The position numbers and the translations under genes are program-made. A DNA stretch of 64,000 nt from Anthoceros angustus (lineage: Eukaryota > Plantae > Anthocerotophyta): assembly GCA_010909165.1 (NCBI GenBank), contig MU008181.1, positions 434,001 through 498,000 on the forward strand, written 5' to 3'. The notes beneath the pieces are model-generated. The model was not told the DNA's origin, searched no databases, and was given only the letters and a program-made list of their open reading frames with translations. This document shows, one piece after another, positions 523-60,569 of the stretch. Numbering within the stretch: position 1 is the stretch's first letter; every line of letters starts with the position of its first letter.

Positions 523-3187
523 TCATACGACCAGGTTTACGTCGCCCCCGGGATTGCACAACTTCCCCGCGACCTTCAGCATCTCATCCACCTCCACAAT
601 TTTCTCTCTCGGCTTTCCCTTCAAGCCTCCCAGTTCCCGCTCCTTTTCATCGATTTTAGCCCAATCTTGGAAGGAAATTGTTGCGGTGCCCTTTTCTTCT
701 AGAATGCTCTGCAAGCCCTGCCCTCCTCCTTTCAGAGGAAGGGGTTCTGAACCTAGCAAGCCTGTCTTATGGTCCTCCACAATAGCCTCGATCTGTAAGC
801 AAGAGTTCTCCTCTATTCAGATATCTCGAGATAAGTGGTCTGTAGATAAGAGAATGCCATAAGAGGGGTAAGACTTACCGTTTCCTCCGCACAAGTCAGG
901 TTGGTCCCGATGATCCCTGTGGGACCCCTCTTGAGCCAGCCAACCACATAAAGGCCGCCTTCAGTCGAGGTCTCATCCTTCTGATTGGCGAGCACTCGAC
1001 CAAAAACATTCGGGATGACCCCTGATGACAGCCACCATTCATTGCTTCAGCCACTGCCATTCATGCCAAGGAGCATAACTGCAAGCAGGCAGAAACAGGA
1101 AAGGACAGACAAACCTCGTTTTTCATCAAAAGGCACTCCAGCAACTGGTATGGACTTGTAGCCAATGCTCTTCAGCACCAGCCTAATCAGTACAGTCCTT
1201 GTGTTTAAGATTCCACATCATGGGCATCACAGTTGATTCGAAAAGAGAAGGAGAAATGAGAGACACAAGACGCACCCTGCTTTGATTTCTTCAAATTCTC
1301 CTGTACCAACCGCGATTTGGCCACCACCTTCGTGTCTCTCTGCCATTGACAGATAAAAATACTCAAAATCACCACAATGCATGCAACAACGAGGACAGGT
1401 ACATGTTAATATATGACGAAGACGGAATACTCACTGAGAACCGACTTCTCCAGGCTCACCCCGCCGACCCTTCGGCCATTACCTGAGGGGAGTATCACAT
1501 GTGGGGCTCTGAAAAACACGAAGTCAAGTTTCTTATCGACCTCTGATGCGTTCTTGTTGGCAGCAGCTTTGCAGAAAAGCTCGTATACACGCTTGTGGCT
1601 TCGACTGGCTTTCATCTCTGCCTGCAGGCAATAACACCGGCTGCACAGGCAGCCTTGATGTCAATTTCCAAGGCTGCCTTGCTACACATCCCTTGGAATA
1701 GTACCAAGGGCGGCAATCATGAGCAAGCAGAGGAAGAGGTCATTAGTGCACCGAGTCCATGGCAGAGGTAGATAAATCCTGCTCTTGTACATTCACCTCC
1801 AAGTCTTTCATTCCTTCAGTTCAACGTTTCCTACTGTGAGGATGTCAGCACATAAGAAATGTAAAAGTTCAGCATAATCACACAACATACACTAGGCGCA
1901 ATGACCAGAAGCAACACCGCATGCATTCCAGCTGATGGTCAGCACAGACGAATTACCAAGAAGCTCACGGAGCTCTTTGGCAGTGCAAGCAGCTTGAACA
2001 GGCCCTCGCCGTCCCACCAGATAGACATGCCTGCAGTTGTCAGAAAGGCCTAGTTAATAGGTCAACCCAAGGTGGTGTACTACGAGCCCATCACCTAAAT
2101 ACCTGATGTTGCTGTCTTTCAACGCAGCCAGTGCGTGATCAGCAATGTCCGTCACTTGTAGTTCACTTGTGGAGCGTAGAAGAATCCTTGCAGCATCCAA
2201 AGCAACATTTCCCTGTGCACCATCACGGTGAAGCGTCTGAAAGCAAGCAGCAAGATATCCCTGACAGAACGGTACGCTCATCAGGCAACTCACTTGTCCC
2301 AGGATAACTGCAGTGTCTGTGCTTTTGAGATCAGGTGCTAAATTTGCGGCGTCAGGATGGCCGTTGTACCACCAGACAAACTCCCTTGCAGCATGCACTC
2401 CCTGCAGGTTCTGTGAAGGTGGAAGGCAAAACAACAATGATTTCAGCACCGAGCACCCCTGCTCCACCGAGGACCAGCAGCAGCAAAAGAAACTGGGCAA
2501 TTGGGCATGAAGTCGTGGTCACCTCTCCTGGGATGCCGAGCGCCCTGTCGCTCTCCGCTCCATATGCAAGAACCACCTGCACCAATGAGCTGTGTGTAAG
2601 ACCAGGTTGAAGACATACAATGAGTCTCTTGCAATGTTGATGTCTGTGCCCCATGAGACATGCATACCACATGGTACAGCTCCCGTAGCTCCTGCAAAGT
2701 GATGTCTCTTCCAAGCGTCACGTTGCCGAAGTAAGAGCATCGGCTGTTTGTTGCCACCCTGCTGAATTGGTTGATGACTATCTGCATGAATCCAGCAGCC
2801 AAACAGCATGAAGCACTGTCTGAATATGAGCCACAGTAGGCTCCCGGGATCAATACCTTCGTTTCAGGATGGTCTGGAGCAACCCCGGATCGAACTAATC
2901 CGAAAGGCGTCGGCAGCCTCTCCACGATGTCCACGCTTGCCTTATCAAATCGTTTCAGCAGCTGCAGCAACCACCCACATTTCAGTCCTGCCCAAAATTG
3001 GCTCCAGTACGGGAATGAGGGGACCGAGCACGGGAGGAATCTGGGCACCTACCTTCTCGGCGGTGTAGAAGCCCGCAGGACCGCTGCCCACTACGCAGAT
3101 GTGCAGCTTGGAGTCAGAGCCATGCAGAGTGGAGAAGCTCCTGAGCGCCTGCACCCCGGCTCTGCTAACGAGGCCCAAGAACCGCAT
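523..3187 (-). CDS. MFDR: NADPH:adrenodoxin oxidoreductase (mitochondrial ferredoxin reductase), multi-exon
   Basis: Exon 1 (3187-3053) MRFLGLVSRAGVQALRSFSTL...HICVVGSGPAGFYTAEK gives a mitochondrial-type presequence plus the FAD-binding GxGPAG motif. Later exons read DIVERLPTPFGLVRSGVAPDHPETK, VVLAYGAESDRALGIPGE, FVWWYNGHPD, GQGNVALDAARILL, VYLVGRRGPVQAACTAKELRE and LYVVGWLKRGPTGIIGTN. GT-AG introns; stop at 523. Confidence 0.93.
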
Positions 3188-3448
3188 TCTGGCCAGCCTT
3201 GGATGCTCCGATCACCGTCCCGGAAGCATCGAGCCGGCCGCAGCGCGATGCAGCGCGGGCGTGCTCACAGCATCTAAATACTGTGCGAAGACAAGCAAAG
3301 GGGAAAGAAAGAAAATTTGGAGCAAGGGATGGAGGAACAGATGTGCGAGGAGCAATGGCGATGGCGATGGCTCTTTAAGAAGGAGAAACTTCAACAGCAG
3401 CAGCCTCCTGAGGTATGAGGCGCAGGAGCCGCAGCAGGTGGAGCGGCC

Positions 3449-6400
3449 ATGAGCCTGCGATGGGACCAGCTTGCGGCTTCCGCCAAGACGCTGGCAGTGG
3501 CCGCCGACAAGTGCTGCCGGTCTGATCGCAGGCGTGGGGTGGTCGTGGCTGCCGTCCGTGTTCGAGCTCGGGGAGATAGCAAGGACGAAAGGCTGGAATG
3601 CTCCAGCTGTGGGACTCCCAGGCGAGGCTCCAGGAGCAGGAGAGGCTGCAGTGGGAGGAAAGTGGGAGCTTTGCATCTCAGCCTGCCTGGGAGTTGTGTC
3701 AGGTGTGTCCCGATCGGAGAAGTTTTGGAATTTGGTTGATTGATTTGGGTGCATTTGGGAGAAGTGAGGACTTGAATTTTGGATCTTGGCGTGGGATTGT
3801 AGTGTGTCGCAAGGGTGATCTGGGTGTCACAATGTTTGAATCGATTGTTGCCATTTTGTTGCAGGCGGCAGAGAGCATGCTCCATGTCTTGGGTGGCAGG
3901 TTCTGTGTACTCTCTTGAAAGTCAAGGCAGCTCTCTGTTAGGAACGTACTTTTTTCAAGGTGCTTTGGGATGGCGGACATCAGCCAGACGTCAGCGGCTG
4001 TGGGCTGGTCCAAGGGTTTTTGTGTTTCGTGGTGTAGCATCATCCAGGTGTGTGGCACAGGGTCAGGCTGAGAATGGCAGATTTGGCAATGGAGCAGAGC
4101 TTGCCAGTGCGCCTGGACAGAGGGGGCTGGATGATGGCCATGTCAGAAGTCAAGTTGAATCTGGTGTGCATCATCACGGTGTTGATTCTGTGGGGCAGGA
4201 AGTGGGGAACAGTGTGCCCAGTCTACCAACTGGAAGCAATTGCAGGCCAAAAAAGAAGCAGCATACCTTCATTGTTTTCGACATTGAAACTACTGGGTTC
4301 AAGCGGGGTGACGACCGCATCATCGAATTTGCTGCTCGTGATTTAGCTGGTGGTGAGAACAGCACCTTGCAGACTTTAGTCAATCCCGAGGGAGTACCGG
4401 TGGGCAGCAGTTTTAACACTCACGGTATTTCTGACACGATGATCAACAATCCTGAGACCCCAAAGTGAGTCTGGGTGGGCCTGTTTCCTGATCCCTGACT
4501 TGGATGCAGTCTCTTTCTTGTGACGAGCTCGCTTCTCATGGTTGTGGATACCCTCAGGTGGGACGAGGTTGCCCCAACTATTGTGGAGTTCGTGGAGTCA
4601 CGTCGAAAGGGCAACGGACTTGTTCTATTGGTTGCGCACAATGCGAAAGTCTTTGATGTACCTTTCCTCATCAGCCACTTTGAGCGCAGTTCCGTGCAGC
4701 TGCCGAAGCACTGGCTTTTTCTGGACACCTTGCCTCTAGCAAAGGTTGTGATGGCTGCCAAAGGTATGATGACTGCCAGAAGTGAATGAAGTTCTGTAGC
4801 TATTTCAGGTTTACAGATGGGAATGTGTATGGATGGTGGAGTGAGAATGACGGCCGGTTCTGTTAGGAAGAGCTAGGCATTTAAGAGAGTTCCTCAGATG
4901 CTGAGAAGAGTCCTGAACCAAGGGGTCACTAATGCACAAAGATAAGTAAGATTAGATTCAGGGAGGAGGTCGCACGGCACAGTTGACCCACCTGGTTGTC
5001 ATAGTTGTTCATGTACAAAGGGTCTTGCTGGCTGTGAGGCTAAGAATCTGAAGTTCGAAAGTTCTGTCTTAGAGCCAAGAGAGCGGAACTTCGTACTTCT
5101 CTGGTACACAGCTAGCTGTCTGACCAGTTCTGCTGGCTTCATCTCCTGACATGTTGAATTGATGTAGTATCAGGTATTTGTGAATACTGATGAGGACCAA
5201 CATAAAGCACTTCCTTCTGTGCGTACAACATGTACGATTGTGTGTCTTGAGCTGTTTGATCTTTAGGTTGATTGTTTTCCATGTTTACCTCATGAACTGG
5301 ATTCGATTGTTCTTGCAGGCGGAAAAGGTGCAAACCTTAGTGCTCTCCGTGACTTCTACAGGTTGCCAGATGCTGGGCAAGCCCACAGGGGCCTGCCTGA
5401 TGTCAATGTCCTAGTTTCCGTGCTTCAACATCTTATGAGAGAACTTCAACTCACACCAAATGATTTGGTAGAGAGGGCGTTCAGAGCCAGTGATTGTAAG
5501 AAGCATTCACAGGGGAGAAGTACTGACGAAGGTACTAAGAGAGAAGAAGACTTCACAGCCTGCACCATCCCTGACACAAGTGACACAGAACTCTCGAGTG
5601 TAGTGGTCACGGACAAGGTGGTTCATTACACTGAAGAGGCTATAGACGAAATCAATGAGGAAGGCGGTAGCATGGCAGGTCCTGCCTCAGGAGATGACAT
5701 TTTTGAAGTCCAAACAGAAACTCTTGCTATATCCCTTGAACCTGGCCTGGTTCTGCAGCCTGTGTCACTAGAAGAAAAGAATCCAACTGGGCTTGACGGT
5801 AACGCAAGGGGGCATTTCTTCCTTGACGGTGCTGGGAATCAGAAACGTGGCCCAAGATTACCGAAAAGGAAAAGGGCATCCTGGTCCAACCACTCTCAAG
5901 ACACTGCTGTCACGCCAGATCACACTTACTCTGAGAGTCCGAGTTTGGGTGTGGGTGAATTCAGCCCGGACAAGAAAAAGTTTTTGGTAGCTATTCTGCC
6001 TCCCTCCAGTGATACTGAGATTTGGGGACTAGCATTCTGTGACATATCAACAGGTATACCCATGTGGCGTCTCTTATCTGCAGCAACTGTATTCAGAACA
6101 ATTGCATGCTCCTTTTATACTTGACTGAAATTGTCTCATGATTGGTTGCAAGTCCTCTAGACCAGTTAACACCCTGGTTTTATCTGTCAGGCGAATTCGG
6201 TGTCACTCATTCTCATGGTAGGCACACGTTGGTGCAGGAGATCCTACGTCTGCAACCATCAGAAATCATTCATCCTTCTGATGTATACTACCCTTTCAGC
6301 CTTGAGATTCATATTTCTCTTGACTTTAGTTGGAAGGGTTGTGAATTGATTGTTACATGTAACGATTGTGCCATGTATCTAACTCTTAGATCTGTGTCTG

Positions 6401-7558
6401 AAGCAGGTCCAGTGCTCGACACCTGAAACCAGTGGATGTGTATACCCCGCGGGCATGCCCCCACAGTTCTGTTATGCAGAGAGACCGAACTCTGACTTTT
6501 CCCCTAGCTCTGCAAGAAAGGTCAGGCTGACTGTCTGCCAGTTTATCTTTTTTATTTGGAGCACATCATGCTTGTGGTTGCTGAGATTGTGATCCAGGGA
6601 CAGGTTTTCTGACTTTTGTCTCTTTGGCATGGTGCAGAAGTTACTGGCACGTTTTGGAGTTGATTCTCTCGAAAGCTTGGGAAGGCAGGAAATTTATGGA
6701 TTGCGGGCAGCCGGTGGCCTTTTGAGGTAAACTTATATTTTGCTTTTACTGGTAAACACATGGTCTGGTGAATGTCGTTGTCTGAGCATCTATGTTAAAC
6801 TTATAATTGTTCAAGTACTTGTGTTCACAAGTATTTGATGCTTCTAACGGTCTTCCACATCCACATTCTAAATTTCATGTTCTGGTGTTGGATCCACACA
6901 GTTATTTGCAAGAAACTCAGAAAGTATCAAGTGGCAGTATCCCCCTTTGCACTCCTCATCCTTATTCTGTTGGTCATTTCATGCACATGGATGAGACTTT
7001 GCGAAGCATGGATCCACCAAAGTGGGATATCTGGTTTGGGAAGAGAAGCCACAAGGGAAGCCCCAATGGTGCAGTCCCCGAAGCAGTGAGCGATCACTCC
7101 CCTGATTCCGGTTCCTCAGAAGTTGAAGGCAACAAGGACCTGACTACTTTGGGGTTGGCAACCAGGGGCAGCACTTGTCAGTTCATGTCCCAGGAAGAGT
7201 TAGACAGTACTTGGAAACAGGTTCACGAATTCTTGCGCACCAAACCTGCTACTCAAGCACTGACAAAACAGAAGGTGAGTACTGACTGACTAAGTCCCTT
7301 GAATTCCATGTCCTTGACAATGAGCATTTGCAGAAAGCCAAGTCTCTCATGCACACACACACGTCTGTGCAGGGTTCTTTGGTTTCCATCTCAAAAACCT
7401 CTGAAAACCTGATAGTCTGCCTTGGTGCACCTGCCCTTTTTGTCAAAAAATTCCAGCAGCATGAGCATGCCACAGCTTTGCAGAGTGCATTCCAATCCGT
7501 CCTGCAGCAAGCTATGGAGCTCAACATCACCGTTGTTGGGGGACCGAGCGAACACTAG
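3449..7558 (+). CDS. Chimeric protein: organelle-type leader + DPD1-like DEDDh 3'-5' exonuclease + MutS1 connector domain + DnaX-like C-terminal domain (predicted 882 aa)
   Basis: Manually spliced exons 3449-3702, 3865-4464, 4558-4763, 5319-6053, 6191-6282, 6407-6520, 6638-6726, 6902-7274 and 7373-7558 are all GT-AG, phase-compatible and stop-free (2649 nt). ExoI VFDIETTG, ExoII VAHNAKVFD, ExoIII AHRGLPD. MutS-II-like WGLAFCDISTGEF..LVQEILRLQPSEI..PPQFCY..KLLARFGVDSLESLG..LRAAGGLLSYLQETQK. Confidence 0.85.
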
Positions 7559-8064
7559 GCCTACCACATTCTTTCAATAACCACACCTCTCTGGACTCCC
7601 AATTTCCCTGACCACAGAAACTGTTGCCACAGTATATTCGTATCCGAAGTCACTTTACTAGTGGTTACGTTGAGGTGACAAAAAGCGTGTCATGAAACCC
7701 TAGTCTAGTTTGGTGATCCGCACCAGAGTTGGAATCATTCGAACAAACGAACAGGACTTCAGTCGAGCGGAGTAGATCTCGGGCGTGACGACGCAAGATC
7801 CGCAAGTGCTGGGAATTTGAAACCAGGCGCAATCGGTTGCTGGCTTGCGTTTCAATTCGCGGGAGCTTGCATGGTACTCGTCTGTCCGTTGTGCGCGCAA
7901 GAGACCGAATCGCGCGTTTCTGCAAGTTTGCTCTCCAGCTGAAAGTCTTGCCGCTAGCGGAAGCTCCTTTCCGGAAGGCGTCCGGATTCTGGAGCTTCGT
8001 TTCATGAATACCTTCGGATCTGGTTGCCCGACATCGCTACCCAGTGTTATGTCACACAGCCAGA

Positions 8065-21340: not shown

Positions 21341-22152
21341 CCACCTGTGGCTCCGCTGTCTGCACCTTGACTCCACATACTACAGTTGACTCGGTCTCTC
21401 TTCCTTGTTCGATTTCAGTTGGGTAGGGGCCGCGCGAACGCGAGCCCCCGCTGTCACAAATTATGACGTCTATTCTACCCGTAGGTAGATAGTGAGGCCA
21501 CCCCGGCCGCAGTGCAATGGCGAGGGTGACCTCAGGTCATCGGCCTTCTTGATCACCGATAGGCCCCGCCCAGGTAAGTATGGAACCCAGCGTACTCTGT
21601 AGGTTTATATTGGACATTTTAGCCGCTGACGAACTCGCTAGCAATATGGGTTATTAGTTTTCTCTCGCGATGTCCATACTCCCATACCTGGCTGTATAGC
21701 AAGCTGGTGGCTTTCGGAGACGACTTCAAGGTCTGACAAGCAGCCTTAGCCCCGAAGTATGTCATCATGTTGCAGGACTTGAATCGGTCTTAAATCTCTG
21801 TGGATGACAAGCGTCATGCAAAATGCATGAGTGACTCTCGGCCAATGGCCGGAGAAGTACCTGGCTTGTGGCGTGCTTGTTTGTGCGCAACTTCGAGTGT
21901 AATAACCAGATGCAGCCTCCGAGAAAGGAAATGCTCTGGCTTTGCCCACATCTGGCAGTATGCTGGATTGGAACTTGGTATAGTATCTGTTCCTGAGGTC
22001 CGCATTTGGATGGTTTGGGAGCGTGATTGGGCGACGATACAGCGTTGGGTTTCTCAATGATCGCTCTCGCATCTCTAAAAGTTTAGGGTTTGATGAGAGA
22101 TTTGGTGGTTTGGTGATTTGGTGCAGTGCGGTGTGCGGAAGGAAGGAGGGCG

Positions 22153-56725: not shown

Positions 56726-57966
56726 GACGCGGACGCCTCGCCTCGTTTCGCTTGCAAGTTGCTGCAAACACGCATCAAGCAACCATGACGTCACGGTTCC
56801 ACAACACATCATGATCCCAGCAGTGCAACAGTGCTTGAAAGCGATGAAGAGCAACAACGTTCTCACGTGCTGCCGCAATCGCCTCTGCGAGATGGCCCAG
56901 GACGCGGAGTCGGTCGTGAAGCTGTGTGTGGATGCAAGAGAGGGAGACTGCCCGGATTTTAAAGCCAATGGACCACCAGAAAGCGTCGTCAATAGAGGAA
57001 AAAGGGAGGAGGCTGTAAAAAGGACCATGTACCTTCATGAATTAAATTATGGAGAAAAACAGCGTGCTGACCCCCTTCTGGGGATAAGCCTTCCTTGTTG
57101 TTGAAAGCACGACTCAATTGAAAATCGTTATTGGAGGTGATATTCTGGAGGTTTCTCCTCTTGTTGTAGGGGTCTCCGGATAGGTTGCCCTCCCTCCCAT
57201 CTCCCTGGAGATGGTGATCGGAAGGTCCCATGTGCTTCACGTGATCTGGGGCTTTTATCCTTGGTAGAAGGGACTCCAATGCTTTGGGATAGCATTGGGA
57301 TAGAAGCAAGCTTGAAAACCCGATGGTATACTAGGAAAGGCTGACTCCCCTCTAAACCTAATTTGAGAACCTATGAAATGCAAAAAACAACCCCTCCATA
57401 ACGTGATGCGCCTTTCCTGGCTTGGATTCCTCAGCCAGTGAGCCAGCGTAAGAGCGCATTGAGCAGCGTCCATGCGCAAAGGGCGACGAGGGGAGTGTGG
57501 GCAAGAGAGGGGGCTGTTATTATGATATATATTAGAACAATTCCGATGCCGCTCACATACGATCCGTGACGCAATGCTAGCGCGTCTGACTTCAGATCAG
57601 AAGATTACGTGTTCAATTCACGTCGGGTTCAGTAATGGCATCTAGAATTTGTTCAGAGATCAGAATTCTTGTCCCATACATACTCTTTGTAACATACTCT
57701 TTTGTAACCCTTGTTCCATACACAGATATATGATATATTCCCTAGTCTTTGTAAGTGAACGCATACGTCCCATGGCCAAATGGACACACATTTATAAGAA
57801 CGCCGTGCTTAAGCATCCTGAGCTTCGATCGGTACTTAGATGGCGTGCCTAAAGATGCCCTTGGTGCAAGTAGCTTAGGTACACCATGGTACAAGTTGTT
57901 AAGTACCAAGTCCCATGAGGAAATCCGTCCTTAGTGGACTTAAATAAAATAACTCTTCTTCTTCTT

Positions 57967-59344: not shown

Positions 59345-59412
59345 TGCACCGGCCGGAATCGAACCTGGTCTGTACCGTGGCAGGTACTATTCTACCACTA
59401 GACCACCGGTGC
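59345..59412 (-). tRNA. tRNA-Gly(GCC)-like copy, 68 nt, with three 1-bp deletions (pseudo-copy or sequencing error)
   Basis: Identical to the 60499-60569 copy except shortened C/G homopolymers in the anticodon stem, T-stem region and T/acceptor junction, plus one substitution. Confidence 0.6.
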
Positions 59413-60498: not shown

Positions 60499-60569
60499 TG
60501 CACCGGCCGGGAATCGAACCCGGGTCTGTACCGTGGCAGGGTACTATTCTACCACTAGACCACCGGTGC
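60499..60569 (-). tRNA. tRNA-Gly(GCC), intronless, 71 nt
   Basis: GCACCGGTGGTCTAGTGGTAGAATAGTACCCTGCCACGGTACAGACCCGGGTTCGATTCCCGGCCGGTGCA: complete cloverleaf, A/B boxes, GCC anticodon, downstream T-runs. Confidence 0.96.

What the first reader, a model, noticed from the sequence alone, without database searches (positions are those of the whole stretch)
3449..7558. Intact DPD1-like exonuclease fused to an isolated cyanobacterial-type MutS1 connector domain (no mismatch-sensor, no ATPase)
Seen: nine phase-compatible exons give one 882-aa ORF with all DEDDh catalytic motifs (DIE, HNxxxFD, HRxxxD). These are followed by WGLAFCDISTGEF-LVQEILRLQPSEI-PPQFCY-LLARFGVDSLESLG-LRAAGGLLSYLQETQK, and no GDFYE-like mismatch motif or Walker A anywhere in the gene. 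Known: the exonuclease wording (LSALRDFY..AHR) resembles seed-plant DPD1, an organelle DNA-degrading DnaQ-family nuclease. As I recall them, the PPQFCY and RAAGGLLxYLxxTQK motifs are typical of cyanobacterial MutS1 domain II. Plastid-derived MutS1 is retained in non-seed plants and lost in seed plants. Inference: this is an organelle-targeted proofreading or DNA-degrading nuclease that uses a MutS-derived module as a scaffold rather than a mismatch sensor. It may be an evolutionary intermediate between an exonuclease-MutS1 fusion and stand-alone DPD1. I cannot confirm it is unreported.
Basis: partly seen in the sequence, partly recalled or inferred. Interest (0 to 1): 0.9.

Follow-up and report, generated by a model that had tools for sequence, protein, structure and literature searches.

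The report
Internally deleted DPD1-MutS1 organelle repair gene
This plant gene is a cut-down copy of a known organelle DNA-repair fusion (DPD1 exonuclease joined to MutS1): it is still transcribed and keeps the DNA-trimming enzyme but has lost the mismatch sensor and the ATP motor that its closest relatives keep.

Summary
Nine exons (3449-7558, + strand) give an 882-aa ORF, and an RNA contig from the same organism splices all eight introns exactly as modelled. The protein has an N-terminal arginine-rich leader, an intact DEDDh (DPD1-type) exonuclease, MutS domain II alone, and a C-terminal DnaA_N-like (STICHEL-type) domain.

The "evolutionary intermediate" reading is only partly right. The DPD1-MutS1 fusion is already published (Sloan et al. 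2024, Plant Cell). This gene is its ortholog: seven of eight introns match Marchantia DPD1-MutS1 in position and phase. It carries two in-frame internal deletions.

Transcripts of two related species (90-99% nucleotide identity per aligned piece) hold 435 nt in place of 6 nt at 5974/5981, where MutS domain I belongs. They hold 2808 more nt at 7007/7008, where domains III-V belong. So this is a recent, lineage-specific reduction, not an ancient step towards seed-plant DPD1.

It most likely still acts as an organelle 3'-5' exonuclease without mismatch sensing. A young decaying gene is not excluded. DNA and RNA support both come from one sample. It is a new variant of a known kind, of moderate interest.

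The parts
3449..7558 (+). Whole coding region. Nine exons give 882 aa: 3449-3702, 3865-4464, 4558-4763, 5319-6053, 6191-6282, 6407-6520, 6638-6726, 6902-7274, 7373-7558. Stop codon at 7556-7558.
   Evidence: ORF chain. All eight junctions are in the RNA contig of run X1. An in-frame stop lies 11 codons upstream of the ATG.
3449..4270 (+). N-terminal leader, aa 1-220. It is Arg/Ser/Ala-rich and poorly conserved, and is presumed to be an organelle presequence plus a variable region.
   Evidence: The first 80 aa hold 19 R+K against 7 D+E. Of 27 listed differences from the relatives, 18 are non-synonymous and 9 synonymous. Targeting was not testable here.
4271..5509 (+). DPD1-type DEDDh 3'-5' exonuclease domain, aa 221-417, interrupted by introns 2 and 3.
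   Evidence: Pfam RNase_T on exons 2 and 3. It is 55% identical to the P0001 and Adiantum exonuclease domains. All five catalytic residues (D, E, D, H, D) are in place in the alignment.
5510..5974 (+). Acidic, low-complexity linker, aa 418-572.
   Evidence: No Pfam hit on exon 4. It does not align with homologs outside the close relatives.
5974..5981 (+). Deletion junction 1. Related species B and C have 435 nt where the window has the 6 nt 5975-5980. The net loss is 429 nt, or 143 codons, at the place of MutS domain I.
   Evidence: Joint '5974 to 5981, skips 6, 435 letters between' in X2 and X6. In full-length homologs MutS_I lies directly before MutS_II.
5981..7007 (+). MutS domain II (connector) plus the first residues of domain III, aa 575-732, spread over exons 4 to 8.
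   Evidence: BLASTP matches aa 576-732 to P0001 873-1030 (E 8e-46). P0001 872-1002 is Pfam MutS_II and its MutS_III starts at 1027. Exon 5 alone hits PF05188. The window keeps 17 of 18 positions that are invariant in six other plants.
7007..7008 (+). Deletion junction 2, on the codon boundary S732|M733. Species B and C have 2808 nt (936 codons) more here, at the place of MutS domains III-V.
   Evidence: Joint '7007 to 7008, skips 0'. The size was computed from the record coordinates table 8 and is the same for X2 and X6. The left breakpoint lies 3 codons before the position of Marchantia intron 1092/phase 0.
7008..7196 (+). Linker, aa 733-795.
   Evidence: It does not align with distant homologs. 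It aligns with the B and C transcripts at 3-5% divergence (table 8).
7197..7543 (+). C-terminal DnaA_N-like (STICHEL-type, PF23007) domain, about aa 796-878, split by intron 8.
   Evidence: Pfam hit on exon 9. All 8 orthologous C-termini hit PF23007, best E 4e-9. The family model has pLDDT 83, and its best whole-domain PDB match is DnaA domain I, 4tps, TM 0.68-0.73. The window keeps 25 of 28 otherwise invariant positions.
7559..7668 (+). 3' UTR, at least as far as the end of the X1 RNA contig.
   Evidence: table 8.

Best explanation
The locus is this plant's ortholog of the known DPD1-MutS1 fusion gene. That fusion joins an organelle-targeted DEDDh exonuclease to a plastid-derived MutS1. Here it has lost MutS domain I (mismatch sensor) and domains III-V (core, clamp, ATPase) through two in-frame genomic deletions. 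What remains is transcribed and correctly spliced into an 882-aa protein. Its order is leader, intact exonuclease, linker, MutS connector domain, linker, DnaA_N-like C-terminal domain. Shown: the gene model, the domain content, the orthology and the two missing segments relative to close relatives. Inferred: the protein still works as a Mg2+-dependent 3'-5' exonuclease on organelle DNA ends, like seed-plant DPD1. It cannot be coupled to mismatch recognition or ATP-driven clamping. The C-terminal KH-like domain was kept in frame because the exonuclease needs it, perhaps for tethering or oligomerisation. The connector is probably a vestigial spacer. My confidence is about 0.9 for the structural and evolutionary part and about 0.55 for continued function.
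For: The RNA contig has all eight introns spliced and both junctions, with no differing letters. The protein aligns in three blocks to full-length DPD1-MutS1 proteins whose Pfam order is RNase_T, MutS_I-V, PF23007. Seven of eight introns coincide in position and phase with Marchantia DPD1-MutS1 introns. Relatives B and C carry 435 nt and 2808 nt more at the junctions, so the net losses of 429 and 2808 nt are both multiples of three. Among the listed indels, those inside the coding region add 3 nt in all (at 6693/6694), while those in UTR or intron are 1, 1, 1, 2 and 6 nt (table 4). Catalytic residues are intact. The window keeps 83%, 94% and 89% of the positions that are invariant in other plants, in the exonuclease, MutS_II and C-terminal domain respectively. 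The fusion and its presumed organelle role are described in PMC12292046.
Against: All DNA (X14) and RNA (X1) support for the deleted form comes from one sample, S1. Fixation in the species is therefore not shown. The age of the deletions is unknown, so an open frame and intact residues could simply reflect too little time to decay. The window has the lowest retention of otherwise invariant exonuclease positions of the seven taxa (83%; next lowest is Physcomitrium at 88%). An isolated connector domain may expose surfaces that are normally buried. The extra sequence in B and C was sized and placed but not read, so calling it domains I and III-V rests on position and length. No test of targeting, activity or protein presence was possible.
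Confidence: 0.6

Rival explanations
1. It is a young pseudogene in waiting. The MutS1 function was destroyed by the deletions, and the remaining ORF, splicing and transcription persist only because too little time has passed.
For: A MutS without domains I and V cannot do mismatch repair. Only one sample supports the allele. Twelve of 69 otherwise invariant exonuclease positions are changed. MutS1 has been lost repeatedly in plants (PMC12292046).
Against: Both deletions are in frame, which has a prior of 1/9 if neutral. There is no stop or frameshift in 882 codons. The listed indels inside the coding region add 3 nt in all, while flanking non-coding sequence has 1-2 nt indels. Catalytic residues and the C-terminal domain are intact. 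The exonuclease lies upstream of both deletions and could be useful on its own, as in seed plants.
Confidence: 0.3
2. It is a truncated paralog beside an intact full-length DPD1-MutS1 elsewhere in the same genome, and the B and C transcripts are orthologs of that other copy.
For: The rest of the genome could not be searched with these tools. Duplicates that then lose domains are common in plants.
Against: At 90% or more likeness, X1 RNA contigs yielded only the deleted form, and X2 and X6 yielded only the long form. The B and C contigs also align to the window's UTRs and to a retained intron (3326-3448, 6054-6190, 7559-7724), as expected for the same locus. The scan's notes on this genome mention no MutS gene, which is weak evidence.
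Confidence: 0.08
3. It is a neofunctionalised protein in which the MutS connector is a selected interaction scaffold. The connector would recruit a partner to the exonuclease.
For: The connector keeps 17 of 18 positions that are invariant in other plants. Both deletions end close to the domain borders, at P0001 873 and 1030 against Pfam MutS_II 872-1002 and MutS_III from 1027. From general knowledge, the connector is the MutL-binding face in bacterial MutS.
Against: Green plants lack a cyanobacterial-type MutL (PMC12292046). High retention is equally expected if the deletions are recent. No other species with this architecture was found.
Confidence: 0.07

Closest known systems
Plant DPD1-MutS1 fusion (cyanobacterial-like MutS1 of non-seed Viridiplantae; Sloan et al. 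2024, Plant Cell, PMC12292046). Examples: Physcomitrium P0033, Marchantia P0032, Riccia P0014, Adiantum P0004, Selaginella P0028.
   Same: It has the same N-terminal DPD1-type DEDDh exonuclease (47-56% identity), the same MutS domain II (31-51%) and the same C-terminal PF23007 domain (46-57%). Intron positions and phases match at 7 of 8 sites, and domain order is the same.
   Different: It lacks MutS domains I, III, IV and V entirely: 882 aa against 1556-2004 aa in the full five-domain proteins. It therefore has no FXE mismatch motif, no clamp and no ATPase.
Seed-plant DPD1 (Arabidopsis AT5G26940 type; stand-alone organelle DNA-degrading exonuclease of about 290-370 aa)
   Same: It shares the homologous DEDDh exonuclease with all catalytic residues (45-49% identity). 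It also has no working MutS part, so the expected biochemistry is the same.
   Different: It still carries a MutS connector and the C-terminal DnaA_N-like domain. It falls outside the seed-plant DPD1 clade, so the reduction is independent.
STICHEL / DnaX-like proteins (Pfam PF23007, DnaA_N-like alpha-beta domain) and DnaA domain I
   Same: The C-terminal approximately 85 aa match PF23007. The family model superposes on DnaA domain I, 4tps, at TM 0.68-0.73.
   Different: There is no clamp-loader AAA+ module. Only this small terminal domain is shared. The two bacterial MutS proteins scanned lack it.
DPD1-RecG fusions of green algae (Coccomyxa P0037, Trebouxia P0035)
   Same: A DPD1-like exonuclease is fused to a DNA-repair protein (PMC12292046).
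   Different: The partner is a helicase, not MutS, and the exonuclease domains are only 34-39% identical.

Membership tests
Plant DPD1-MutS1 gene lineage (orthology) | N-terminal DPD1-type DEDDh exonuclease with the five catalytic residues D, E, D, H, D | tested here: met
   FDIETTG, HNAKVFD and HRGLPD align with the catalytic columns of seven DPD1-MutS1 proteins. RNase_T Pfam hits.
Plant DPD1-MutS1 gene lineage (orthology) | Shared gene structure (intron positions and phases) with a bona fide member | tested here: met
   Seven of eight introns coincide, within 0-2 alignment columns and in the same phase, with Marchantia introns at 406/2, 475/1, 956/1, 985/0, 1023/0, 1053/2 and 1859/0.
Plant DPD1-MutS1 gene lineage (orthology) | C-terminal PF23007-type domain after the MutS part | tested here: met
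MutS protein family (functional MutS1) | Domain V ATPase with Walker A/B, the only domain common to all MutS subfamilies (PMC12292046) | tested here: not met
   There is no Walker A in the protein. There is no domain V similarity in the protein or anywhere in the 64-kb window.
MutS protein family (functional MutS1) | Domain I with the F-x-E mismatch-recognition motif | tested here: not met
   There is no domain I similarity. 'GHFFL' at aa 518 lies upstream of the junction where the relatives carry their extra 143 codons, so it is not a remnant.
MutS protein family (functional MutS1) | Domain II (connector) | tested here: met
   aa 576-732 aligns to P0001 873-1030, E 8e-46, and P0001 872-1002 is Pfam MutS_II.
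MutS protein family (functional MutS1) | Domains III/IV (core, clamp) | tested here: not met
   Only the first few residues of domain III remain.
Seed-plant DPD1 clade | Membership of the stand-alone DPD1 clade in an exonuclease-domain tree | tested here: not met
   The window groups with non-seed DPD1-MutS1 exonuclease domains (88/90). Seed-plant sequences form their own clade (96/96).
Seed-plant DPD1 clade | Plastid and mitochondrial targeting, and Mg2+-dependent exonuclease activity on organelle DNA | not testable with these tools
   Only a basic, acid-poor N-terminus is seen.

The most novel reading that the evidence does not exclude
This species is a recent natural replay of the seed-plant transition from DPD1-MutS1 to a MutS-less DPD1. 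Selection kept the exonuclease and the C-terminal DnaA_N-like domain in frame through two separate deletions. That would show these two modules have a MutS-independent job in organelle DNA metabolism. The species and its full-length sisters would then form a natural knockout/wild-type pair for asking what plastid-derived MutS1 does to organelle mutation and recombination rates.
Probability: 0.4. Interest if true: 0.55.

Novelty: new variant of a known kind. Interest (0 to 1): 0.4.

Why it matters
According to the 2024 paper that described it, the function of plant DPD1-MutS1 has not been studied. An expressed form that keeps only the exonuclease, the connector and the C-terminal domain, next to sister species with the full protein, gives two things. 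First, it hints which modules matter without MutS activity. Second, it offers a comparative test: if MutS1 contributes to organelle mismatch repair or recombination control, the organelle mutation spectrum and rate, or repeat-mediated recombination, should differ between this species and its relatives. It also shows how seed plants could have arrived at stand-alone DPD1. The value is limited because the parent architecture is known, the event is lineage-specific, and it is supported by one sample.

Tried and rejected
1. Assembly gap or mis-join: rejected. Both junctions lie inside exons and are read through by an RNA contig with no differing letters. A DNA run of the same sample holds 0.69 of the sampled words of 5800-7300, introns included.

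2. Two separate genes: rejected. One RNA contig spans the start to the 3' UTR.

3. Exon skipping, or conversion by a spliced cDNA, as the origin of the deletions: not supported. The right end of deletion 1 (F575, matching Marchantia F933) lies 36 residues past the nearest Marchantia intron (897/0). The left end of deletion 2 lies 3 codons before intron position 1092/0. The window keeps all neighbouring introns. This could not be checked against the gene structure of B and C.

4. Fetching the B/C orthologs or the window's own annotated protein failed. Searches with regions of P0004 and P0001 returned only distant plants. The exon 4 query returned nothing. The representative search gave at best 51% identity.

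5. The Physcomitrium locus look-up found no record.

6. dN/dS from the 27 listed differences covers only the leader (9 synonymous, 18 non-synonymous) and says nothing about the domains.

7. Bacterial origin of the C-terminal domain: the genome-contig scan found nothing, the PDB sequence profile search found nothing, and two bacterial MutS proteins lack the domain.

8. The full spliced protein could not be given to Pfam, the structure tools or the atlas, because it has no reference. Those tools saw only exon pieces and homolog ids; the spliced protein was compared by BLASTP and MAFFT in scripts.
Full report
**Observation.** This gives a small set of open nine-exon chains. The 882-aa chain is 3449-3702, 3865-4464, 4558-4763, 5319-6053, 6191-6282, 6407-6520, 6638-6726, 6902-7274 and 7373-7558. 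An in-frame stop lies 11 codons upstream of the ATG.

Public runs were searched with 3300-7700. One RNA run of the same organism (X1, organism A) holds 0.59 of the sampled words, which matches the exonic share of that stretch. When laid on 3200-7900, X1 gives one 4897-nt contig with no differing letters. It skips exactly the eight modelled introns, all GT..AG. The gene is therefore one transcript, not two.

**Domain content.** Pfam on single exons gives:
- RNase_T on exons 2 and 3;
- MutS_II on the 30-aa exon 5;
- PF23007 (STICHEL DnaA_N-like domain) on exon 9.

A search of 1.8 billion representative proteins with exon 4 found long plant proteins. Their Pfam order is RNase_T, MutS_I, II, III, IV, V and often PF23007. 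Named examples are Adiantum, Riccia, Marchantia, Selaginella and Physcomitrium.

The spliced window protein aligns to them in three blocks only:
- exonuclease, aa 221-417 (55% identity to P0001);
- MutS_II plus the first residues of domain III, aa 576-732 (51%);
- the C-terminal domain, aa 790-877 (49%).

tblastn of three full-length homologs finds nothing of domains I or III-V in the whole 64-kb window. The five DEDDh catalytic residues are in place.

**What is known.** Sloan et al. 2024 (Plant Cell, PMC12292046) describe this fusion. A plastid-derived, cyanobacterial-like MutS1 in liverworts, mosses, lycophytes, ferns and some algae carries an N-terminal DPD1 exonuclease. MutS1 was lost in seed plants, which keep stand-alone DPD1. 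The paper states that no functional study exists. It does not mention hornworts, a truncated form or the STICHEL-like C-terminus. Only that paper and one 2026 preprint in the held library mention both DPD1 and MutS1.

**Orthology.** I mapped the 19 exons of Marchantia DPD1-MutS1 on its genomic locus L001. Seven of the window's eight introns coincide with Marchantia introns in position (0-2 alignment columns) and phase. The window lacks the three Marchantia introns inside domain I and the seven inside domains III-V, together with that coding sequence.

**The key result.** Transcript contigs of two related species (B in X2, C in X6) lie on the same stretch, including the UTRs. Aligned pieces are 90-99% alike (table 1), and mismatch counts per piece give 3-9% divergence (table 8). 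They contain extra sequence at two points inside window exons:
- 435 nt replace the 6 nt 5975-5980;
- by the record coordinates, 2808 nt lie between 7007 and 7008, the same number in both species.

The first point is immediately before F575, where MutS_II starts. This is where all homologs have MutS_I. The second is after S732, a few residues into MutS_III, so the missing piece corresponds to domains III-V plus a linker. The net losses, 429 and 2808 nt, are both multiples of three.

The window gene is therefore an internally deleted ortholog, and the loss is younger than the split from these relatives. I did not see the letters of the extra segments. Their identity is inferred from place and size.

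The breakpoints do not fall on conserved intron positions: 36 residues away for deletion 1 and 3 codons away for deletion 2. Plain genomic deletions are therefore more likely than exon skipping or cDNA conversion.

**Function or decay.**

For function:
- Both deletions are in frame.
- There is no stop or frameshift in 882 codons.
- Among the listed indels against B and C, those inside the coding region add 3 nt in all (at 6693/6694). The UTRs and a retained intron show indels of 1, 1, 1, 2 and 6 nt (table 4).
- Catalytic residues are intact.
- The window keeps 57 of 69, 17 of 18 and 25 of 28 positions that are invariant in six other plants, in the exonuclease, connector and C-terminal domain respectively.
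- The transcript is spliced and present at a depth similar to its neighbours.

Against function:
- The age of the deletions is unknown.
- The 83% retention in the exonuclease is the lowest of the seven taxa.
- DNA (X14) and RNA (X1) support both come from one sample, S1.
- The 27 listed substitutions fall in the leader only (9 synonymous, 18 non-synonymous) and are uninformative.

I put continued function as an exonuclease at about 0.55 and decay at about 0.3.

**Mechanism proposed.** The protein would be an organelle-targeted Mg2+-dependent 3'-5' exonuclease acting on free DNA ends, as seed-plant DPD1 does. It would not be coupled to mismatch sensing or an ATP-driven clamp, because both modules are gone.

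The C-terminal domain is conserved in all land-plant orthologs examined (27 invariant columns of 98). All 8 hit PF23007. The family model has pLDDT 83. Its best whole-domain structural match is DnaA domain I (4tps, TM 0.68-0.73), a KH-like protein-interaction module. That it stayed in frame through two deletions suggests the exonuclease needs it. This is inference. The connector is most simply a vestige; a scaffold role is possible but untested.

**Placement.** In an exonuclease-domain tree the window is sister to all other non-seed DPD1-MutS1 domains (88/90). Seed-plant DPD1 forms a separate clade (96/96). The window is thus about equally distant from mosses, liverworts, lycophytes and ferns. 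Together with Logan contig totals of about 94-147 million letters for most DNA runs, this fits a hornwort. I could not establish the organism and the report does not depend on it.

**Verdict.** However, it is a recent private reduction of a published fusion, not an ancestral intermediate. It is a new variant of a known kind, with interest about 0.4.

Noticed in passing
window 7197-7543; also P0001, P0014, P0028, P0032, P0033, P0004, P0009, P0030 C-termini: All land-plant DPD1-MutS1 proteins examined end in a strongly conserved domain of about 85 aa (motif FQQHEHA.ALE.AF). It matches Pfam PF23007 (STICHEL DnaA_N-like) and a DnaA domain I fold. The 2024 paper on the fusion does not mention it, and two bacterial MutS proteins lack it.
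   Followed up: partly
window about 2054-3187, minus strand: A head-to-head neighbour gene looks like an adrenodoxin-reductase-type flavoprotein by its motifs (ICVVGSGPAGFY..., VAPDHPETK). Its ATG at 3187 is only about 260 nt from the ATG at 3449. The X1 contig runs on from one gene into the other, so the 5' ends probably overlap or share a promoter region.
   Followed up: no
window 3415-3525, + strand: A 36-codon upstream ORF in another frame starts 34 nt before the main ATG and overlaps it.
   Followed up: no
window 6054-6190: The transcript contig of related species B (X2) retains this intron, while species C and organism A splice it out.
   Followed up: no
window 21423-21581 (-); 57560-57631 (+); 59345-59412 (-); 60499-60569 (-): A U1 spliceosomal RNA gene (130 bits) and three tRNA genes were found by Rfam.
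   Followed up: no
P0005 (Diphasiastrum complanatum, 892 aa) and P0034 (Senna tora, 1131 aa): P0005 has the exonuclease plus a MutS_I cut at profile position 86 of 113. It is probably a split gene model rather than a second truncated form. P0034 joins importin-alpha repeats to a DPD1 exonuclease and is probably a merged gene model.
   Followed up: no
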